A stretch of 32,937 nucleotides of DNA from Platydemus manokwari (Eukaryota). The stretch's first letter is position 1. Every line of letters begins with the position of its first letter. The DNA lies in the NCBI GenBank assembly GCA_037951405.1, contig JBBMOY011100329.1, positions 1 through 32,937 on the forward strand. Direction: 5' to 3'. Below are positions 1-28,330 of the stretch, piece by piece. The position numbers and the translations under genes were made by a program. The notes under the pieces were generated by a model. That model made no database searches and was not told the origin of the DNA. It saw only the letters and a program-made list of their open reading frames with translations.

Positions 1-575
1 GGGTAATGCCATTACCCCAGTTGCTAATATAGCCATAAAGCGTTAAGTAAAAATGAAGTTACTATGCCGTAGCTCACTTCCGTATATCCGCTCATATTAT
101 AATAAGCAAACATATGGAAGTAGGGTCCTGAGACCCTAATAATCCCAATTGAAGGTATTCCTTACCTTCCCTATTAATACTGAAACCAATACCAATAGGG
201 AAAGCAAATGCGCGCCAGGAAAAGTTACGCGCACTCACCCACTCACCAGAGAAGTTTCCAAGCCGCGGAGCAGAGATCCTTCTTTATGGACACTCGTAAG
301 AATTCATAAAGAAGGAGGGAAGTGGCAGTCTTCCCAACCTTGTTATAAGGAGGATTTAGAACATATGGGCAACCAAAAAACCAATGACAAACTCGATGGT
401 CGACGAGCTTCTTTAAAAGCACTCAGTAAATGCGCTTAAAGAAACCAAGATAGTAATGTTACATAATATCTTGGACCTGTGTAAGCAATCACAGAAAGAT
501 TTGATATGAGCAATGCAATTCGAACAAGATGACTGACAAGCTAGAGGGTCATTTCGTTACATAATATATATTATC
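1..575. ncRNA. Putative large structured non-coding element (array of ~13 stem-loops); may extend upstream of the window
   Basis: Consecutive inverted repeats read by eye: 1-17, 76-121, 122-137, 151-169, 167-202, 209-233, 277-316, 317-335, 338-350, 409-443, 445-474, 477-494, 521-556. No convincing ORF. An RNA function is inferred, not shown. Confidence 0.4.
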
Positions 576-590
576 TCCATTAAATAATAA

Positions 591-610
591 ATAGATATTA
601 TTAGAGTGTA
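591..610 (+). promoter_or_regulatory. Candidate phage early promoter (AYATTAT-N5-TGTA motif)
   Basis: ATAGATATTATTAGAGTGTA; same spacing at 11201, 17497 and 26312, each intergenic and upstream of a gene run. Confidence 0.65.
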
Positions 611-639
611 TAACTAACATAAATTTAGAGGTCAGTATA

Positions 640-1251
640 ATGAACGTAATTACTCAGGATCAAATTGATAAGATTCGTAACACAATCACTGCCAACTTAA
701 GGGAAAAGTTTTCGTTGGATCAAGTCGTTGTATACGAAGTTCCTGAAGAATGGTTGTACAAAGGAAACACTTTCGAGTCCAAAGTCTATGCTTTGGAATT
801 TATCATCAACTGTAATACTCGCTATACTGTGTTCTTTGGAACTCGAAATGGTCAGATCAGATTGACCCGCGCTAAGGAAGGTATTGTCAAATATCTGGCC
901 GGTCAAGTTCGTCCACATGACTTCGGTCTGTTGGCGACAGGGGATTACTTCCGTCGTGATGACATGGTAGGTAAATTCCTGGAGTATGTGATCAATCAGA
1001 AAGTTAATTTCGATATTGAGAACTTACTCGGAAATCTGTACGAAAAAGCTCCACGTACTGCGGACTACACATATTCGTATTATGTCACTCGTCGGCATAA
1101 AGCGACTATGCTGTATGACTGCGAACTGGAAATTCTGGTTCGTGGTGAAAGGGCTAGTAAATTTGAGAAGTATGAAGGGATCATTGTAAATGGTCACTTA
1201 ACAACATTGAAACACGAAGGGACAGAAGTTCCTTTGAAATCTATTTTCTAA
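640..1251 (+). CDS. hypothetical protein (203 aa)
   Basis: ORF with GAGG RBS, directly after the promoter motif. Confidence 0.85.
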   Translation: MNVITQDQIDKIRNTITANLREKFSLDQVVVYEVPEEWLYKGNTFESKVYALEFIINCNTRYTVFFGTRNGQIRLTRAKEGIVKYLAGQVRPHDFGLLATGDYFRRDDMVGKFLEYVINQKVNFDIENLLGNLYEKAPRTADYTYSYYVTRRHKATMLYDCELEILVRGERASKFEKYEGIIVNGHLTTLKHEGTEVPLKSIF

Positions 1252-2075: not shown

Positions 2076-2487
2076 AGAAGCTATAGGACGCATCAGAGAC
2101 GCTGCTGAAGCTGTTTGTCGTATCAAGGTGAGTGTTATTACGGATACTAAGCTTGGAACGCCTAGTGGTCGTTCTGTGGCTCGTGCTATCAGTGAATTAA
2201 CTAACAAGATGCCTGAGTTTAAAACAATCCGTATTAACCGTGATGACGCATCTATTATTTTCTATGATTTGATTTGGGTAGTAAGGGGTGAGGATAATCA
2301 TTTCTCTCCTTCACTTATCTTTATCGATCCAGCCAATAAGTCGGATGGCGCTATCTTACGTATATGGGTTGACTCCCGTCATACAGCACACATCACCACT
2401 AACTCTGGGTTTAAAGGCGTTATTAATTTCGTTACACCAGGTGATCTGGTTGAATGGATTGTTGAGTATCTTGACGAGATTAATTAA
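2062..2487 (+). CDS. hypothetical protein
   Basis: Start moved to ATG 2062 after GGAGGT RBS. Confidence 0.8.
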   Translation: MAISKEAIGRIRDAAEAVCRIKVSVITDTKLGTPSGRSVARAISELTNKMPEFKTIRINRDDASIIFYDLIWVVRGEDNHFSPSLIFIDPANKSDGAILRIWVDSRHTAHITTNSGFKGVINFVTPGDLVEWIVEYLDEIN

Positions 2488-2594
2488 TTTCTTACCCTTG
2501 TTCTTATTAATTGTTTAGGGGTAGGGGTTTAAAATCCGGAAGGATAATTACTATAAATTAAGTATTACGAAGTAATCATCATACAGAGGTAGTT

Positions 2595-3224
2595 ATGAAC
2601 ATGTCTTTTATCATCCTTAGTGTTCTTGTAGTTCTTATTGGTCTTTGCATTAGCAAAGTCATTACCTATAAAGCTAAGATGAGAGAAACAGAAGTAATTA
2701 ATTCAATCAAGAAAAAGATTGAAGAGTTTATTATGGCTGGTGATAATCTGGGGTTATTGAAAGATACCACAGTGAATTATCAAGATGCGATTAAGGAAAT
2801 TGCTGAAAGAGAAGCTAAAGGACACAAAGTACGGTTGGGATTTATGGATCGTGGTTGTTTCATGGAAGTAATAATGACTTCTCCACATGTCGTTAGTTCT
2901 TTCTATTACGTTCCATTTTATATCCCTTCTTTGAAAGCAGAGAAAACACCTGATCCTAAATCTAATCATCGCAGTGACTTAAATGAACATGTTCGCCATG
3001 TTCACGAGTTTGTGGTTATGATGGCAGCGCATCGTCAATTGCTTAACAGTGCAAGCCTGACTCGTGCTGATCTGGATGGTATAGTTACTGAAGTCACAAA
3101 GATCTACGGTGATGTTGTAGATATCTGTGTGTTTAACTTCGGTGCAGCTCGTGGTAAAATCCGTATTACAGATCGAGATAACATCGATCATAAAGTAGAA
3201 CAACTTCTCCCTTGCTTAAACTAA
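2595..3224 (+). CDS. N-terminally membrane-anchored protein (paralog family member, possibly two domain copies)
   Basis: Hydrophobic N-terminus FIILSVLVVLIGLCI; GAGGT RBS; motif LTRADLDGIVTEVTKIYGDVVDI shared with neighbours. Confidence 0.85.
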   Translation: MNMSFIILSVLVVLIGLCISKVITYKAKMRETEVINSIKKKIEEFIMAGDNLGLLKDTTVNYQDAIKEIAEREAKGHKVRLGFMDRGCFMEVIMTSPHVVSSFYYVPFYIPSLKAEKTPDPKSNHRSDLNEHVRHVHEFVVMMAAHRQLLNSASLTRADLDGIVTEVTKIYGDVVDICVFNFGAARGKIRITDRDNIDHKVEQLLPCLN

Positions 3225-5197: not shown

Positions 5198-5204
5198 TCC
5201 AACA

Positions 5205-5440
5205 GGGTGAGAATGTATTATATGTAGTCATGCATTCTCACCTTACTCATTTCTCCCCTTGGGGTAGGAGTGAGGGTACATGATTTTCTCTTCTTTTGTC
5301 TTACTTTAAGGGGATAGAGGGGCAGATTTCATTCTCTTCTTCTTCTCTTACCCTTTTAAGGGTAAATATAATATATTATATATTTATTATATTAGAGTAA
5401 GTATTACAAAAGAAAAGAAAGAAGATCAAAGAAAAGATTT
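5205..5440. other. Structured AT-rich intergenic element
   Basis: Hairpins 5205-5243, about 5246-5273 and 5348-5365; long-range imperfect IR 5285-5309/5392-5420; perfect AT-only palindrome 5366-5381. Confidence 0.45.
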
Positions 5441-5474
5441 ATTTGAAAATTTCCCAAAATTGAATTGAGGTCAT

Positions 5475-6069: not shown

Positions 6070-6603
6070 ATGCGTAAATTAGAATCAGCAGTAGATGTAA
6101 TCTTTGAACTTGTAATTAAGCAGATTGCTAAAGTAATTATAGATCGTTTAATGTTTGATGAAGTTCAACCATATGAGTTTCAAACAGCTATCGGTCCCAT
6201 GGTTTATTATCCTTATGTCGCTACGTATACTTCAGCACGTGTTACTTACAATGACATACTTATATATTCTACTGGGCGTCGTTATTTAGAAGCCGAAGGT
6301 GATATTAAAATCAGGCAAGAGTTAACACATGAACATACTGTTAAAACTATTCGTGCGGTTATCAAAGATATTCCTGCGTTATACGGTCCAGAAAAGGTAA
6401 GCATCGATCTTCAAGATCTGGTCAATCTCATTTCTTTGGTTAAAGCATTGGCACCTGGTGAAATTCCTGAGTACGTCAAAAGAATTGAGAAAGATATTAC
6501 CAAAGGGATAGAAACCAAAATGGATTACATCATAGGTGGTGAGAAAGACGCCATAGCTATGATTGGTAATATTAAACGGTTGGAAGCATTGTTAAACAAA
6601 TAA
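6070..6603 (+). CDS. hypothetical protein
   Basis: ORF with GAGGT RBS. Confidence 0.85.
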   Translation: MRKLESAVDVIFELVIKQIAKVIIDRLMFDEVQPYEFQTAIGPMVYYPYVATYTSARVTYNDILIYSTGRRYLEAEGDIKIRQELTHEHTVKTIRAVIKDIPALYGPEKVSIDLQDLVNLISLVKALAPGEIPEYVKRIEKDITKGIETKMDYIIGGEKDAIAMIGNIKRLEALLNK

Positions 6604-6618: not shown

Positions 6619-7275
6619 ATGAATGTATTATCCTATTGTAGTATCTGTGATCAGTCTTTAAATCGTTTTGATATGGCTAACGATATGTTCAAGTGGTCTC
6701 AGGCTATGTCTCAAAGAAGTTTAAAGAAACGTAACTTCCGTCAACTGAAAAAGTTCCTTCAGAAAAAAGGTTGGGTTTATAAACGCAGATATCCATTCAA
6801 AGGTAAAGGTCGAACTACTGTTACATTACTGTCCATTGTTAGACAGAATTCAATAACTGAATTCAATAAAACCCATAAGCTGGGTAAGACCGTATGTTAT
6901 TTCCCTGCAAAAGCCAAACCGTTTAACGATAGGAAAGAGGTTTACGGAGATAAAGAAGTCTTTGGTGGGAAACTCGTTTCCTTAGTTCGCGAGCTTACTT
7001 CGCAAGAGAATCCAAAGAACGCTGAATTCCTTTTAGGTCAGAGACGCGCTTTTGCCCGTGTTACGACAGAGGAGATCATTAAATCACTTATCGAAGAACG
7101 TGCTGGTGTTAAATTGAAATTCAGTTCTGATTGCGAAGCACTTAGTCCTGAAGTACATTCAGCCATGTTAACAATAGTCCAAACATGGATCGAAAGTTCA
7201 GATGAAGTTCAATCTTTATTAAGTTCGCTTGATAAAGAGTTTGGACTTAAACTAGATTTGGAGAAGAAAGAATGA
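6619..7275 (+). CDS. hypothetical protein, basic N-terminal half
   Basis: ORF with GAGG RBS. Confidence 0.85.
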   Translation: MNVLSYCSICDQSLNRFDMANDMFKWSQAMSQRSLKKRNFRQLKKFLQKKGWVYKRRYPFKGKGRTTVTLLSIVRQNSITEFNKTHKLGKTVCYFPAKAKPFNDRKEVYGDKEVFGGKLVSLVRELTSQENPKNAEFLLGQRRAFARVTTEEIIKSLIEERAGVKLKFSSDCEALSPEVHSAMLTIVQTWIESSDEVQSLLSSLDKEFGLKLDLEKKE

Positions 7276-11193: not shown

Positions 11194-11220
11194 TTTTCAA
11201 ATAGACATTATTTAAGTGTA
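11194..11220 (+). promoter_or_regulatory. Candidate phage early promoter
   Basis: TTTTCAAATAGACATTATTTAAGTGTA, between a terminator and the next gene. Confidence 0.7.
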
Positions 11221-22908: not shown

Positions 22909-24987
22909 ATGTCATCTGCGGGACCATTCCTCTCAGAAGAATACAGTAGCGATCGTAATATAACCAAGCATGCTATCGACCAGTATGCCATGATGATCGG
23001 TCGTTCAAAAGGATTAGACGAAGATGAGGTTAGAAAGAACCTTGTTGCGTACTTTAAGGCTAATCAGGAAAAGTTCCGTTCACGTCGTGCAAAAGTGATT
23101 GTTAAAAACAAGAACGAAGACCGTGAGCTGAAAGTATTACCTTTAAGTGGTGTATTCAAACACGTCCAATCAAATAACTATCATTTCTCTCCATCTATGG
23201 TTGCATATACCAACTCAGATAAAGAGGAGTGTGTGAACTCTATCGGTACACGTTTGTTTATCGATAACCGTAAGTACTATAAAGATCTCCGTCAAGAAGC
23301 TAAGGCCAATAACAACCCAGATCTTTATGGTAAGTACCATGAATTACAGAACGCCTTTAAAATCTTTAACAACGCACAATCAGGCGCAATGAGTTCGGAA
23401 GGGACACCTATTAACAACAAGACCGGTCATACCTCATTGACTTCGACCTGTCGTTGTTTAACGTCCACAGCAAACCTTATTAATGAACAGTTCATAGCAG
23501 GGAACCGTTTCTATAACACTCCTGAGAACACATTACAGGCAATCCTGGCCCGACTTAAGGTTACGGATTATAAAGCCCTTGATGATGTGATGAAGAAGTA
23601 CAATCTTCATTATGCAACTGTTGAAGACGTTATGGGACAGGTAGCTTATTGTTCCAAACGTTATTGGGAATCCGATCACCACACCAGAATCATTGAAGGA
23701 TTTGTTAAGAATCTTTCCGCTCTGGAACGTTCTTCTATTCTTTACACTATGGACTTGGTGCAACTCTTTGCCCATAATAAAGAAATGGTTTCTAAGTTCT
23801 TCGATCGTTGGGTTGAACTGAATCCACCAGAAGAAGGCAAAACAGAAAACGATTACCTGAAACCTGATAATGGTGACAAGTACACACTGTGTATTTCTAA
23901 GCTACCAAGTAAACCATCCAAAGTCATGGTCAATGCACTCAACACTTTACATATGGAAGTGGAAACTGAGTACAGCGATTTCATGAAGGTGTTCTTCCAT
24001 TCACCGATTCCTCCGTCAGGTTTGTTTGATGTAGTTTCGGCAGTTCGTGATTGCGTATTGACGTCCGATACTGACTCATCCATTTATACCGTGGATGAAA
24101 TGATCGAGAACTATACTCATGATCGTGACAAAGGTGTTAAACTGAATGCGGTACTGACATATTTTATTCGTATGATTTCGGTTGACCAACATCAACAGTT
24201 ATCTGCTAACCTGAACGTAACGAAGAAAAACCTTCGTATGTTGGGTATGAAAAACGAATACTACTTTGGTGCTTATGTTACGACATTGATGTCAAAACAC
24301 TATTACGCAAGCCAGCTTATGGTTGAAGGTGTAATGAACCATGAACCTGAAATGGAAATCAAAGGTGTTCACTTAAAGTCATCTAAGATTGCAGCGAACA
24401 TCAAGGAATTTGCTCAGAAGTTAATGAACGATACCTTGATTGCAATTGAGAAAAAACAAAAGCTTAACGCTGCTGAGACTTTAAAAGAGATTGGGGATCT
24501 AGAGCGCACGATCGTTGAAGATATTACAGCTGGTGATTGGAAATGGTTATCCCGCCAAGGTGTTAAAGCAGCGGCGGCTTATTCAAAACCAATGGCTTCT
24601 GTTTACTTTTATCATGAACTGTGGGAAAACGTTTTTGCTGACAAATATGGCCCAGCTCCCGAACTTCCTTATGTTGGGGTTAAAATGTCAGTTGACTTAG
24701 GTTCTAAATCTAAGGTTAAGGAATACCTGGAGAAACTTGAAGATAAAGAGTTAGTTGCTCGTCTTGAGAAATTCATGGAGAAGACAGGTCGTACCGATTT
24801 AGGTAACTTAGTTGTTCCTATGGAACGTCTGCAATTCATGGATAACATCCCAACAGAAATCAAACAAGCGATCGACTATCGTACTATCATCAAGCAGAAC
24901 CTGAAGTGTGTTTATGAGGTTCTGAACTCCACAGGCTTGTACTTTATGAACGATTCCATTACTCGTTTAGTATCCGACGAACACTAA
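22909..24987 (+). CDS. family B DNA polymerase, polymerase subunit of the split phiKZ-type enzyme (gp50-like)
   Basis: Motif B QNAFKIFNNAQSG, motif C SDTDS, KHYY and EIKGV; no recognisable exonuclease domain. Confidence 0.9.
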   Translation: MSSAGPFLSEEYSSDRNITKHAIDQYAMMIGRSKGLDEDEVRKNLVAYFKANQEKFRSRRAKVIVKNKNEDRELKVLPLSGVFKHVQSNNYHFSPSMVAYTNSDKEECVNSIGTRLFIDNRKYYKDLRQEAKANNNPDLYGKYHELQNAFKIFNNAQSGAMSSEGTPINNKTGHTSLTSTCRCLTSTANLINEQFIAGNRFYNTPENTLQAILARLKVTDYKALDDVMKKYNLHYATVEDVMGQVAYCSKRYWESDHHTRIIEGFVKNLSALERSSILYTMDLVQLFAHNKEMVSKFFDRWVELNPPEEGKTENDYLKPDNGDKYTLCISKLPSKPSKVMVNALNTLHMEVETEYSDFMKVFFHSPIPPSGLFDVVSAVRDCVLTSDTDSSIYTVDEMIENYTHDRDKGVKLNAVLTYFIRMISVDQHQQLSANLNVTKKNLRMLGMKNEYYFGAYVTTLMSKHYYASQLMVEGVMNHEPEMEIKGVHLKSSKIAANIKEFAQKLMNDTLIAIEKKQKLNAAETLKEIGDLERTIVEDITAGDWKWLSRQGVKAAAAYSKPMASVYFYHELWENVFADKYGPAPELPYVGVKMSVDLGSKSKVKEYLEKLEDKELVARLEKFMEKTGRTDLGNLVVPMERLQFMDNIPTEIKQAIDYRTIIKQNLKCVYEVLNSTGLYFMNDSITRLVSDEH

Positions 24988-26304: not shown

Positions 26305-26331
26305 TTTTGAAGTCTATATTATTTAGGTGTA
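26305..26331 (+). promoter_or_regulatory. Candidate phage early promoter of chmA
   Basis: TTTTGAAGTCTATATTATTTAGGTGTA. Confidence 0.7.
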
Positions 26332-26413: not shown

Positions 26414-28330
26414 ATGTCTTTAGATAACAACGCTCACAACGATTCTCAGAACAACGCTGGTAATAACAACAAAGGTAACAACAACATGTCCCAAGAAAAT
26501 TCCCTGTTCGCTCTGCTGGGCCAGGCAAACCTGATCTCTTCCACCTCTACTATCACCGAAGTCCGTGATATCGTTAAGAGCCTGGAAGACACTCTGGAAC
26601 ATCTCCAGAAGAACACTGCATCTCCGGCTCAGAAAATGGCTCTGCCGCAGCTGGTTCAGAACATCACTTCCGACATCTCTGGTCCGCTGCCAGGCATCAC
26701 TCTGTCTACCATCATCGGTGGCACTCGTTATGTCATGCCGGTTCTGTTCTACAAACAAGGCGTAACTGAGCAGACCGAAGTTATCCTGCTGGCTGGCGAA
26801 ACCATGCCGCGCGGTATCGCTAAAGTAGCGTCCAGCTTCATGACCCAGGAACTGATGGAGAAAGTTAAACAGTCTTCTTCTTTCCATGAAGGTAAAACTC
26901 TGAGCAAAGTTATCATCGTTGCTCCGACCGTACTGAACCTGGAAGCATTCATCAAGAATGCAGCTCGCGTTGAAGACGTTGCTGGCGATGTCCGTAGCTA
27001 CATTCTGAAAGAATGGTCTACTGCGCTGTTCAACTACGTTATCCTGGAAGTTGCTAAGCAGGGCGCTCAGTTCCCGTCTCCGTTCAAAGATGGCCAAGTA
27101 TTCGGTAAAGACAACGCCGCTGTTGCGCGCATCGAACCGATCAACAAAGCTATCATCGACGGTAAAGCAACTCCGTGGAACCTGGCTGTTAAACTGGCAA
27201 CCACCAACAAAAACAACACTCAGAACGTTAACAGCAATAACACCAAGTCTATTGCAACTACGTACCTGAACGTTTCCCTGGAATGCATGAATACTCAGCA
27301 GTTCATGCAGGCTCGTCAGAAGTTCCCAGGTAAAGTTGTTGGTCCTCTGGTTCCGGTTATCTCTACTGGCCAGACCATCCCAGGCGAAACCCTGAACAGC
27401 AACAACAGCATGATTCCGGTTCTGCTGGGTCTGTTCGCATCTATCGGCGCAAACAACATTCAGTACTTCTCTGAAGCCATCCGTGGTAAAGAAGTAGGTC
27501 ATCGTGGCAACCTGTCCAACTTCAACAACTACATGACTCAGATGCTGGGTCAGGCTTACGCTCAGTCTGTACTGACCGATAAGAACATCACCAACGCAGC
27601 AGTCGTTAACAACTGGCTGAACACCTATGTGGCACCGAACGCGGTTTACGTGCTGGATCTGGCTACCTTTACTGAAGACGTTTCTAACAGCGACTTCTGG
27701 TGGAACATCCTGCAACAGAAATCTGGTTCTATCTACCACAAAGCTCTGATCACCATGCTGGACGTCCTGACCGGTAACTCTTTCTCTACCATCATCGCTG
27801 AGAACGCAGCTAAAGGTCAGAACCGCAACCCAGGCACCGAATGGGTAATGGGCGACGATATCCTGACCCCGACTCCGATCCTGATGCCTACCGGTATCGC
27901 TCGTGCGAAAGACGGTAAGTGGTTCGATCTGGCTGAAGTTGATGGCATGTTCCTGCGTCAAGATCAGTACTACGGTAACAACGAAATCCTGACCAACGAG
28001 TACATGGGTCTGATTGGCGGTCAAACTCAGGGCGACCTGAAAATGCGTCAATACAACATCTACACTCGTCTGAATCAGCTGTTCGATACCAACGTTCAGA
28101 TCGATGGTTGGAAACGTCGTTTCATCTGGAAAGACGCATTCTTCCACACTCTGGCACGTGCAATGGCAAATGCTGGTACTCTGACCATGTCTTCCTCTAA
28201 CATGGCTTCTATGTGGACCATGCAGCACAGCAACGACTACCTGAACTACACCATGACTGCTGCTATCCAGCAGGGTATGCAAACTTCTGGTATGGGCGGC
28301 CTCTCTGGCGCATACAGCAACCACTACTAA
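26414..28330 (+). CDS. chmA: chimallin, major phage-nucleus shell protein
   Basis: 638 aa; lies between the polymerase/reverse gene and the nvRNAP beta' subunit; segments VAPNAVYVLDL, LDVLTGNSF, DGKWFDLAEVD and VQIDGWKRRFIWKDAFFHTLARAMANAG align by recall with 201phi2-1 ChmA; extreme high-expression codon bias. Confidence 0.9.
   Translation: MSLDNNAHNDSQNNAGNNNKGNNNMSQENSLFALLGQANLISSTSTITEVRDIVKSLEDTLEHLQKNTASPAQKMALPQLVQNITSDISGPLPGITLSTIIGGTRYVMPVLFYKQGVTEQTEVILLAGETMPRGIAKVASSFMTQELMEKVKQSSSFHEGKTLSKVIIVAPTVLNLEAFIKNAARVEDVAGDVRSYILKEWSTALFNYVILEVAKQGAQFPSPFKDGQVFGKDNAAVARIEPINKAIIDGKATPWNLAVKLATTNKNNTQNVNSNNTKSIATTYLNVSLECMNTQQFMQARQKFPGKVVGPLVPVISTGQTIPGETLNSNNSMIPVLLGLFASIGANNIQYFSEAIRGKEVGHRGNLSNFNNYMTQMLGQAYAQSVLTDKNITNAAVVNNWLNTYVAPNAVYVLDLATFTEDVSNSDFWWNILQQKSGSIYHKALITMLDVLTGNSFSTIIAENAAKGQNRNPGTEWVMGDDILTPTPILMPTGIARAKDGKWFDLAEVDGMFLRQDQYYGNNEILTNEYMGLIGGQTQGDLKMRQYNIYTRLNQLFDTNVQIDGWKRRFIWKDAFFHTLARAMANAGTLTMSSSNMASMWTMQHSNDYLNYTMTAAIQQGMQTSGMGGLSGAYSNHY

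What the first reader, a model, noticed from the sequence alone, without database searches (positions are those of the whole stretch)
1..575. At least 575 nt of back-to-back stem-loops: candidate large structured RNA or DNA structural element in a jumbo phage
Seen: in an otherwise wall-to-wall coding genome, this stretch has no credible gene but is tiled with hairpins, several with 0-2 nt between them. They are GGGTAATG/CATTACCC (1-17), ACTTCCGTAT/ATATGGAAGT (76-121), AGGGTC/GACCCT (122-137), GAAGGTA/TACCTTC (151-169), TTCCCTATT/AATAGGGAA (167-202), TGCGCG/CGCGCA (209-233), TCCTTCTTTATG/CATAAAGAAGGA (277-316), GGGAAG/CTTCCC (317-335), CCTT/AAGG (338-350), TTCTTTAA/TTAAAGAA (409-443), CCAAGATA/TATCTTGG (445-474), CTGTG/CACAG (477-494) and GATGAC/GTCATT (528-553), ending in the palindrome ATAATATATATTAT (561-574). 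The stems differ in sequence, so this is not a CRISPR or tandem repeat, and they lack U-tracts, so they are not terminators. Several stem mismatches are G-U on the + strand, which favours a + strand RNA. Inference: a long ncRNA (scaffold, protein sponge/decoy, antitoxin-like RNA or precursor of small RNAs), or a cruciform-rich DNA site for replication or packaging. I do not recognise it as a known family, and it probably continues upstream of the window.
Basis: partly seen in the sequence, partly recalled or inferred. Interest (0 to 1): 0.8.

Follow-up and report, generated by a model that had tools for sequence, protein, structure and literature searches.

The report
Large structured RNA of nucleus-forming phages

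Summary
The hairpins are real. Window 1-560 folds far better than shuffles (z -5.0 on +, -7.0 on -). It is more conserved than the flanking genes and holds no conserved ORF. The strand call was wrong. G-U pairs lie on the minus strand (198 G-U cells against 18 A-C; + strand 25 against 21), and the consensus fold is -128 kcal/mol on minus against -82 on plus. The RNA starts near a conserved motif (window 567-557), folds into about 15 helices, and ends in a GC hairpin plus U-tract cut by the window edge (1-20). About 42 nt are missing. Window 577-611 is a published early-type promoter for the + strand gene at 640, not RNA structure. Two covariance models find the RNA on the same strand and at the same junction in about 16 phage lineages (Pseudomonas OBP, Edwardsiella pEt-SU, Klebsiella N1M2, Serratia, Shewanella, Kosakonia, Pantoea, Erwinia and Aeromonas phages). 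It always sits upstream of a tRNA island. Rfam 15 gives no match. It resembles ROOL and GOLLD in size and setting but is not a member. Its function is unknown. My best guess is a stable trans-acting RNA particle that binds a partner through repeated invariant hairpins.

The parts
1..560 (-). Body of the structured non-coding RNA. The inferred 5' end is at about 560. The 3' end lies about 42 nt left of window position 1.
   Evidence: RNAalifold gives -127.9 kcal/mol on the minus strand, with 143 pairs of which 41 are compensatory. The plus strand gives -82.0. G-U asymmetry is and shuffle controls. Models R1 and R2 hit window 63-336 and 403-563 on the minus strand. The extent in the closest relative, L010 2921 to 2322, comes.
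1..20 (-). H16: GC-rich 3' hairpin, terminator-like, cut by the window edge. Its U-rich tail and a following AU hairpin (H17) lie outside the window.
   Evidence: Three of its 6 pairs show compensatory changes. It is called terminator-like in L010 2383-2360. ARNold predicted a terminator on the complement strand of N1M2. The H16+H17 module recurs across the family.
21..25 (-). 3' arm of tentative long-range helix H3, pairing with 509-513. It could instead form a local 3-5 bp hairpin.
   Evidence: 59 of 60 cells are paired, but no compensatory change supports it.
76..121 (-).
   Evidence: helices 10-11. There are 17 G-U cells against 2 A-C.
122..137 (-). H14: 6-bp hairpin with a tetraloop. On the minus strand the loop is GAAA, GCAA or UUCG in most relatives.
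   Evidence: alignments.
141..158 (-).
   Evidence: 85% of cells are paired and 3 pairs show double changes. In the wider set 80.6% are paired (helix 7).
164..205 (-).
   Evidence: 9-10 pairs are compensatory, with 36 G-U cells (helix 6).
206..236 (-).
   Evidence: All 10 pairs show compensatory change in the 17-sequence set (helix 5).
257..276 (-). H9 and H10: short nested helices around a nearly invariant GC-rich segment.
   Evidence: helices 3-4.
277..316 (-). H8: 12-bp hairpin and first copy of the invariant-stem module (TTCTTTA...TAAAGAA, 280-313).
   Evidence: (helix 2).
317..335 (-). H7: 6-bp hairpin with a conserved 7-nt loop.
   Evidence: All 6 pairs are compensatory in the 17-sequence set (helix 1).
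336..406 (-). Variable, mostly unpaired linker rich in insertions and deletions. It holds a conserved pyrimidine-rich motif, the complement of AAGGAGG at 347-353. On the + strand this reads as a ribosome-binding site plus ATG (365-367) for a non-conserved mini-ORF (365-439).
407..445 (-). H6: 14-bp hairpin and second copy of the invariant-stem module (409-443).
   Evidence: (helix 5).
446..473 (-). H5: 10-bp hairpin whose upper stem and loop carry the second exact copy of the 12-nt word GTTACATAATAT (458-469, written on the + strand).
   Evidence: (helix 4).
477..494 (-). H4: 5-bp hairpin.
   Evidence: helix 3.
509..513 (-). 5' arm of tentative helix H3, inside a 10-nt segment that is invariant in 12 sequences.
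521..561 (-). H2: 5' terminal hairpin.
   Evidence: helices 1-2.
556..567 (-). Promoter-like word (ATATTATGTAA on the minus strand). It occurs only here and at 459-469 in the 33-kb window. The inferred transcription start is G at 560.
   Evidence: The PhiKZ non-virion RNA polymerase late-promoter word lies at -3 to +1 (PMC7618050). The start site is an inference.
577..611 (+). Early-type (OBP/N1M2-class) phage promoter for the + strand gene at 640. It is not part of the RNA.
   Evidence: It is orthologous to the promoter listed as pORF256 in the N1M2 supplement. The core at 594-608 matches the published word with 1 mismatch, and similar sites precede the ORFs at 6619, 11252 and 26414.
640..1251 (+). 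Conserved divergent neighbour gene (203 aa, function unknown). It was used as the anchor to find relatives.
   Evidence: It hits no Pfam or PHROG family. The AlphaFold model is weak and has no structural match.

Best explanation
Window 1-560, read on the minus strand, is the gene for a non-coding RNA of about 600 nt. It is conserved in the OBP / pEt-SU / N1M2-like clade of nucleus-forming jumbo phages. What is shown: the RNA strand, about 15 helices kept by compensatory changes, the family-wide distribution, and a fixed position at the head of the leftward unit that carries a Tad2-like anti-defence gene and/or a tRNA island. What is inferred: transcription starts at a conserved word sharing its core heptamer with the phage's early promoters (start at about window 560, the base of helix H2); the RNA ends at, or is processed near, a GC hairpin with a U-rich tail (window 20 to beyond the edge), followed by an AU hairpin. 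My committed guess at mechanism is that it accumulates as a stable, compact, trans-acting RNA particle. Its job would be to bind, scaffold or sequester a protein or ribosome-related partner through sequence-invariant features. Those features are two to three copies of a hairpin whose stem never varies (280-313 and 409-443), invariant loops, and a single-stranded pyrimidine-rich motif. It would work like the large ornate phage RNAs ROOL and GOLLD that also sit beside tRNA islands. I put the minus-strand structured RNA at above 0.9, the free-standing trans-acting reading at about 0.55, and any particular partner as unknown.
For: Fold z-scores are -7.0 on the minus strand and -5.0 on the plus strand. 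The consensus fold of 12 relatives is -127.9 kcal/mol on minus (143 pairs, 41 compensatory) against -82.0 on plus. On one shared alignment the values are -126 against -94, and column shuffles give -23 and -17. G-U against A-C cells are 198 against 18 on minus and 25 against 21 on plus. Sliding the 3' partners drops pairing from 96.4% to 39-50% and compensatory pairs from 45 to 5-10. Covariance models of the 3' core and the 5' domain hit the minus strand of the same intergenic gap in Kc263, Survivor, OBP, AH04, PS1, ACP1 and ZPAH34, at 38-111 and 47-77 bits. On those wider alignments 52 of 81 and 22 of 39 pairs carry compensatory changes, and 0 of 500 shuffles reach this. The RNA region is more conserved than the neighbouring genes, for example 77.1% against 60.8% nucleotide identity with SXP01. 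No ORF is conserved. A terminator-like 3' hairpin is found. The start word is conserved: twice per locus in close relatives and once in OBP, Kc263 and Survivor. tRNAs lie on the same strand 0.5-2 kb downstream in every locus. The invariant-stem hairpin module occurs 2 times in the RNA against 0.02 expected per 33-kb window, and up to 3 times in OBP. ROOL and GOLLD are phage RNAs often found near tRNA islands. Abundant large ncRNAs are known in lytic phages ICP1 and K.
Against: No expression data exist for any member, so the transcript, its ends and its abundance are all inferred. In the window's own clade the AU hairpin after the GC hairpin abuts the ribosome-binding site and start codon of the Tad2-like gene. 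That arrangement fits a 5' leader as well as a free RNA. The long-range closing helix H3 has no compensatory support, and a local alternative exists. The + strand ribosome-binding site plus ATG at 347-367 keeps 7-11 nt spacing in most relatives and remains unexplained. The effective number of independent lineages is modest, about 9 close and 7 distant, and the model-built alignments lean towards the model's structure. No partner has been identified.
Confidence: 0.6

Rival explanations
1. The structure is a long cis-acting 5' leader of the leftward operon (Tad2-like gene, small ORFs, tRNAs). It would control read-through of the GC hairpin and U-tract, or access to the first ribosome-binding site, rather than act as a free RNA.
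For: The element always heads the same transcription unit. In the window's clade the last hairpin (H17) uses the U-rich tail of H16 as its 5' arm, and its 3' arm touches the Tad2-like ribosome-binding site 14 nt before the ATG. That geometry is suited to coupling folding with termination or translation.
Against: The downstream gene is not constant. Aeromonas phages have tRNAs and no Tad2-like gene. The Yubaba, N1M2 and L020 clade inserts about 110 nt with a canonical terminator before the Tad2-like gene. A size of 550-750 nt with about 15 helices far exceeds known leaders. No riboswitch, T-box or other leader family matches.
Confidence: 0.22
2. The locus is a replication or packaging element. 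Either the DNA hairpins themselves act as cruciforms, or the transcript acts as a structured primer or R-loop RNA at an origin placed at the switch of gene orientation. This would be analogous to plasmid ColE1 RNA II or the phage T4 origin transcripts (named from general knowledge, not tested here).
For: The element sits exactly at a divergence of transcription. AT-rich palindromes lie at both ends (561-574 in the window, and H17). GC skew changes sign here, at -0.054 in 1-500 against positive values beyond.
Against: There are no iterons or tandem repeats. Helices are kept through G-U intermediates on one strand only, and they carry RNA-type stable tetraloops. This argues against DNA cruciforms. 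The skew change is equally explained by the switch of coding strand. Nothing ties the RNA's 3' end to a DNA start site.
Confidence: 0.08
3. One reading: the functional RNA is the + strand, possibly with translation of the small ORF at 365-439 from the strong ribosome-binding site at 347-353.
For: AAGGAGG or a weaker purine-rich variant lies 7-11 nt before an ATG in most close relatives. Annotators called small + strand ORFs at the syntenic place in OBP and AH04.
Against: The + strand consensus is 46 kcal/mol worse and shows no G-U excess. ORF length ranges from 7 to 39 codons. The closest relative, at 90% identity, stops after 7 codons. A conserved nucleotide block is read in different frames in different relatives. 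The only predicted + strand promoter lies downstream at 577-611.
Confidence: 0.04
4. The region is a decayed or unrecognised protein-coding gene.
For: ORFs of 90-110 codons exist in single genomes: 96 aa on + in the window, 110 aa on - in Yubaba, and 109 aa on + in OBP.
Against: The longest ORF changes strand and frame between close relatives. There is no family match. Paired compensatory substitutions dominate the variation.
Confidence: 0.01

Closest known systems
ROOL RNA (rumen-originating, ornate, large)
   Same: It is a phage or prophage-encoded non-coding RNA of roughly 500-600 nt made of many helices. It often lies beside tRNA islands and its function is unknown.
   Different: There is no match to the Rfam model, even at E up to 10. 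The hosts differ: lytic nucleus-forming jumbo phages of Gammaproteobacteria. Pseudoknots and nanocage assembly were not tested.
[quoted passage not shown]
   Same: It is a large structured phage RNA near tRNAs with a variable and a conserved half, and it accumulates during lytic growth.
   Different: There is no Rfam match. This RNA is about 600 nt, up to about 750 in OBP, while many GOLLD members exceed 800 nt. No tRNA is embedded in it.
OLE RNA
   Same: It has a similar size (about 600 nt) and degree of structure. It acts as a ribonucleoprotein and is linked to ribosomal protein bS21.
   Different: OLE is a chromosomal RNA of Bacillota and is not a phage RNA. There is no Rfam match here.
Abundant large ncRNAs of lytic phages ICP1 (about 800 nt) and phage K
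   Same: These are ORF-less gaps of about 1 kb in lytic phages that give the most abundant transcripts. The phage K RNAs lie near tRNA genes.
   Different: No sequence relationship was found: blastn against phage records returned only this clade. Expression is measured for those RNAs but not for this one.
Non-coding RNAs reported for PhiKZ
   Same: They come from the same virus family, Chimalliviridae.
   Different: PhiKZ was not among the blastn or neighbour-protein hits. No homology is shown.

Membership tests
ROOL RNA | Significant match to the Rfam covariance model | tested here: not met
   cmscan of the window at gathering score, of window 1-700 at E up to 10, and of 7 relatives' loci at E up to 1 gave only tRNAs and chance hits. 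The ROOL, GOLLD and OLE profiles are in Rfam.
ROOL RNA | Encoded in phages or prophages, often beside tRNA islands | tested here: met
   tRNA genes lie on the same strand 0.5-2 kb downstream in all loci.
ROOL RNA | Homo-oligomeric RNA-only nanocage | not testable with these tools
   This needs solution biophysics or cryo-EM of the transcribed RNA.
GOLLD RNA | Significant match to the Rfam covariance model | tested here: not met
GOLLD RNA | Many members exceed 800 nt | tested here: not met
   The RNA is about 600 nt in the window's clade (L010 2921 to 2322) and about 730-750 nt in OBP.
Intrinsic (rho-independent) terminator, for hairpin 1-20 | GC-rich stem-loop directly followed by a U-rich tract on the transcribed strand | tested here: met
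   On the minus strand, L010 2383-2360 has 9 pairs (5 G-C) and then a tail with 4 consecutive U. ARNold called the N1M2 orthologue. The tail is weak in the window's clade and doubles as an arm of the next hairpin, so efficiency is uncertain.
OBP/N1M2-class early promoter, for 577-611 | Match to the published promoter word upstream of a gene | tested here: met
   Window 594-608 matches with 1 mismatch, 32 nt before the ATG at 640. The N1M2 orthologue is listed as a predicted promoter.
Protein-coding gene | An ORF kept open in the same frame across relatives | tested here: not met
tRNA / tmRNA | Detection by ARAGORN or the Rfam tRNA/tmRNA models | tested here: not met
CRISPR array, tandem repeat or iteron origin | Repeated units of one sequence | tested here: not met
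   Only one exact 12-nt repeat pair and a 2-copy 8-mer were found.

The most novel reading that the evidence does not exclude
This is a new class of large structured RNA specific to nucleus-forming jumbo phages. It would be made early and build a defined RNA-only or RNA-protein particle. Candidate roles are capturing ribosomes or mRNAs through its single-stranded pyrimidine-rich motif, or acting as a decoy within the anti-defence and tRNA arm of the genome. That would be an RNA-level host-takeover or counter-defence device with no described counterpart.
Probability: 0.2. Interest if true: 0.9.

Novelty: new variant of a known kind. Interest (0 to 1): 0.72.

Why it matters
Very few structured RNAs above 400 nt remain unexplained, and each has opened new biology. 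ROOL and GOLLD turned out to be RNA nanocages, and OLE is a ribonucleoprotein. This RNA is conserved across at least six genera of nucleus-forming jumbo phages, which are being studied closely for their compartmentalised infection cycle and for therapy. It sits beside an anti-defence gene and the phage tRNAs, and it is unannotated in every deposited genome. It offers a concrete, well-bounded target, with a secondary-structure model and two covariance models, for expression mapping and structure determination. It also shows that the apparently empty divergent junction of these genomes is under stronger selection than the genes around it.

Tried and rejected
Rfam gave nothing but tRNAs, both at gathering score and at permissive E-values, on the window and on seven relatives. 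ARAGORN found nothing in the window. The IMG/VR protein and pattern scans returned only pEt-SU and OBP themselves, plus two chance matches (L006, L008) that did not align. The JGI metagenome scans, one by protein and one by DNA pattern, found nothing. The genome-contig scan gave one chance hit in a Flavobacterium MAG that neither covariance model recognises. The idea that ATATTATGTAA is a general promoter word was rejected, because it occurs only twice in the 33-kb window, both times inside this element. A first promoter search was mistyped, with one base missing, and was repeated correctly. The small + strand ORF was examined and rejected as a conserved protein. The neighbour protein was modelled to look for an RNA-binding fold, but the model is weak (pLDDT 68.5) and has no meaningful PDB match. 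The long-range helix H3 was re-examined and downgraded to tentative. Literature searches found no description of this RNA. I did not hand a typed 930-character structure string to the count of structure pairs. I ran the same controls in a script instead and used structures stored by the model search.

Full report
1. What is in the sequence.

Window 1-639 precedes the first credible gene (640-1251, + strand). It holds no tRNA, no Rfam family at gathering score, and nothing meaningful at E up to 10. Its ORFs are at most 96 codons. As single-stranded RNA, window 1-600 folds to -153 kcal/mol on the + strand (shuffles -121.3, sd 6.3, z -5.0). On the minus strand it folds to -190.3 (shuffles -145.7, sd 6.4, z -7.0). 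None of 100 shuffles reaches either value. The rest of the window encodes a PhuZ tubulin, a nuclear shell protein, a split multisubunit RNA polymerase subunit and a divergent family B DNA polymerase. The genome is therefore a nucleus-forming jumbo phage (Chimalliviridae).

2. Relatives.

blastn found the stretch, unannotated, in Shewanella phage SXP01 (78% identity), Klebsiella phage N1M2, Serratia phages Yubaba and Sureiya (about 70%), and partly in Edwardsiella phage pEt-SU. Using the 203-aa neighbour protein as an anchor gave five more lineages from public assemblies. In every case a gap of 690-820 nt separates a minus-strand Tad2-like gene (PF11195), followed by tRNAs and a glutaredoxin gene, from the + strand orthologue of the 203-aa gene. 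The gap is more conserved at nucleotide level than the genes beside it. Identity is 82.8% against 71.4% for L013, 77.1% against 60.8% for SXP01, and 68.0% against 54.2% for N1M2.

3. Structure and strand.

On a 12-sequence alignment, RNAalifold gives -82.0 kcal/mol for the + strand (99 pairs, 32 compensatory). For the minus strand it gives -127.9 (143 pairs, 41 compensatory). In the minus-strand structure 198 cells are G-U and 18 are A-C. In the + strand structure the counts are 25 and 21. The extra pairs therefore exist on one strand only. Using one shared alignment of nine non-redundant sequences, the minus strand scores -126 and the plus strand -94, against -23 and -17 for column shuffles. 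Sliding the 3' partners by 1-3 columns drops pairing from 96.4% to 39-50% and compensatory pairs from 45 to 5-10. Permuting partners among sequences never exceeds 91.8%. Helix H14 (window 122-137) carries GAAA, GCAA or UUCG loops on the minus strand in most lineages. These loop classes are known, from general RNA knowledge, to stabilise RNA hairpins. I conclude that the functional molecule is a minus-strand RNA.

4. Anatomy (window coordinates, minus strand, 5' to 3').

- H2 521-561, then H4 477-494, H5 446-473 and H6 407-445.
- A variable linker at 336-406.
- H7 317-335, H8 277-316 and H9/H10 257-276.
- H11 206-236, H12 164-205, H13 141-158 (weak), H14 122-137 and H15 76-121.
- A poorly conserved stretch at 26-75.
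- H16 at 1-20, which is cut by the window edge.

A long-range helix (509-513 with 21-25) is predicted but has no compensatory support, and a local alternative exists. I treat it as tentative. The hairpins at 151-169 and 338-350 are not supported.

5. Ends.

On the minus strand the word ATATTATGTAA occurs at 567-557 and again at 469-459, and nowhere else in the 33-kb window. Every close relative has exactly these two copies about 100 nt apart. OBP, Kc263 and Survivor have one copy, about 90 nt from the + gene. Its core heptamer is that of the early-promoter class published for N1M2 and OBP. It also contains the four-letter word that overlaps the start site of PhiKZ non-virion polymerase promoters, at -3 to +1. 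From this I infer a start at about window 560, the base of H2. This inference has not been demonstrated.

At the 3' end, H16 is a GC hairpin followed by a U-rich tail. The scan calls it terminator-like in L010, and the N1M2 authors' ARNold run lists the orthologue as a terminator on the complement strand with no gene assigned. Across the whole family the U-rich tail is also the 5' arm of a second, AU-rich hairpin (H17) that covaries. In the window's clade H17 ends 14 nt before the Tad2-like start codon. In the Yubaba, N1M2 and L020 clade about 110 nt more follow, ending in a canonical terminator. In L010 the RNA spans 2921 to 2322, about 600 nt. The window lacks roughly its last 42 nt.

6. What is not RNA.

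Window 577-611 is orthologous to a predicted early promoter of N1M2 (pORF256 in that paper's supplement). Its core at 594-608 belongs to a word class also found before the ORFs at 6619, 11252 and 26414, the last being the nuclear shell gene.

7. Wider family.

tblastn with the neighbour protein found more distant phages: Pantoea Survivor, Kosakonia Kc263, Pseudomonas OBP, Erwinia AH04, and Aeromonas ACP1, PS1 and ZPAH34, among others. All have 600-1000 nt gaps at the same junction. A covariance model of the 3' core (window 63-336) hits the minus strand of each gap at 111, 103, 76, 67, 55, 41 and 38 bits. A model of the 5' domain (window 403-563) hits Survivor, Kc263, OBP and AH04 at 77, 73, 68 and 47 bits. 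On the resulting alignments 94.2% and 96.6% of cells pair. Compensatory change is seen in 52 of 81 and 22 of 39 pairs, and 0 of 500 shuffles reach either figure. Covariation scores are 0.41 and 0.43, against at most 0.125 for slid partners. These alignments lean towards the model, but the independent MAFFT-based tests agree. OBP gives a second, weaker hit and three copies of the hairpin module, which suggests an internal duplication. Scans of IMG/VR, JGI metagenomes and 185,579 species genomes found no further members.

8. Coding potential.

The longest ORF in the gap changes strand and length between close relatives. It is 96 aa on + in the window, 49 aa in the 90%-identical L010, 110 aa on - in Yubaba and 40 aa in pEt-SU. 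None hits Pfam or PHROGs. A + strand ribosome-binding site (AAGGAGG, 347-353) and ATG (365-367) keep 7-11 nt spacing in most close relatives. However, the ORF runs 7 to 39 codons, and a conserved nucleotide block inside it is read in different frames in Yubaba and L019. The same letters on the minus strand form a conserved, mostly single-stranded pyrimidine-rich motif just 5' of H7. I cannot decide which reading explains the conservation.

9. Mechanism.

The following is shown: a conserved, highly structured minus-strand RNA at the head of the leftward unit, next to tRNAs. Early expression and the ends are inferred. The function is unknown.

Several features point to recognition by a partner rather than mere folding. 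H6 and H8 share a stem sequence that never varies while other stems covary freely. This module occurs 2 times in the RNA against 0.02 expected per 33-kb window, and up to 3 times in OBP. Several loops and linkers are invariant. One hairpin (H5) repeats the start-site word. I therefore commit to a stable trans-acting RNA particle that binds or sequesters a partner, analogous in kind to ROOL and GOLLD and to the abundant large ncRNAs of phages ICP1 and K.

The main rival is a cis-acting leader of the Tad2-like and tRNA operon. The H16/H17 geometry in the window's clade favours it. The changing downstream gene, and the extra terminator in other clades, weaken it. An origin or primer role is possible but is unsupported by repeats.

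10. Novelty.

No Rfam family and no paper in the searchable library describes this RNA. All deposited genomes leave the region unannotated or place small hypothetical ORFs in it. It is a new family within the known kind of large structured phage RNAs near tRNA islands.
Noticed in passing
window 5198-5474 (+): This is a second unannotated conserved non-coding element in a 277-nt gap between ORFs. About 200 nt are 86-87% identical to N1M2 and Yubaba, 79% to Kc263 and 72% to OBP, making it the best-conserved DNA of the first 8 kb. It folds well only on the + strand (z -5.35 against -1.6). A 4-sequence consensus has 67 pairs, 7 of them compensatory, with many G-U pairs. It may be another structured RNA or an elaborate terminator-leader.
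   Followed up: partly
window 2452-2604: This stretch is 86% identical to SXP01, although the flanking genes are too diverged for megablast. It shows no fold signal (z -0.7 and -0.45). It is probably the end of ORF 1963-2487 plus terminator and promoter.
   Followed up: partly
window 347-439 (+): A strong ribosome-binding site and ATG sit inside the RNA gene on the opposite strand. The mini-ORF is 24 codons here and 7-39 codons in relatives. The frame is not conserved, yet the start region is.
   Followed up: partly
window 458-469 and 556-567: The 12-nt word GTTACATAATAT repeats exactly. One copy lies at the inferred start site and the other in the loop and upper stem of hairpin H5. Both are conserved in all close relatives. 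The second copy could be an internal promoter or an RNA copy of a recognition site.
   Followed up: partly
window 23738-23784 (+): A third match to the hairpin module TTCTTTA...TAAAGAA lies inside the DNA polymerase gene. Only 0.02 matches are expected per window. It may be chance or a related site.
   Followed up: no
window 26414-28330: The nuclear shell (chimallin-like) gene has about 50% G+C against about 40% for the rest of the window. It also carries an almost full-length antisense ORF (26420-28324, 634 aa).
   Followed up: no
window 6493-6507, 11204-11218, 26315-26329 (+): Early-type promoter words of the N1M2/OBP class lie before the ORFs at 6619, 11252 and 26414. Four sites occur in the window against 0.98 expected.
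   Followed up: partly
L013 1059-1134; L019 1022-1097: ARAGORN reports phage tRNAs with A at the first anticodon position, namely tRNA-Asn(att) and tRNA-Asp(atc). Sister phages carry tRNA-Asn(gtt) at the same place.
   Followed up: no
L026 (Pseudomonas phage OBP) 1684-2413 (-): The OBP version of the RNA is about 150 nt longer. It gives two hits to the 3' core model and has three copies of the invariant-stem hairpin, which suggests an internal duplication. The annotated ORF OBP_015 lies inside it.
   Followed up: partly
L020 286-819; L028 24-527: HNH endonuclease genes are inserted among the tRNAs downstream of the RNA in some relatives.
   Followed up: no
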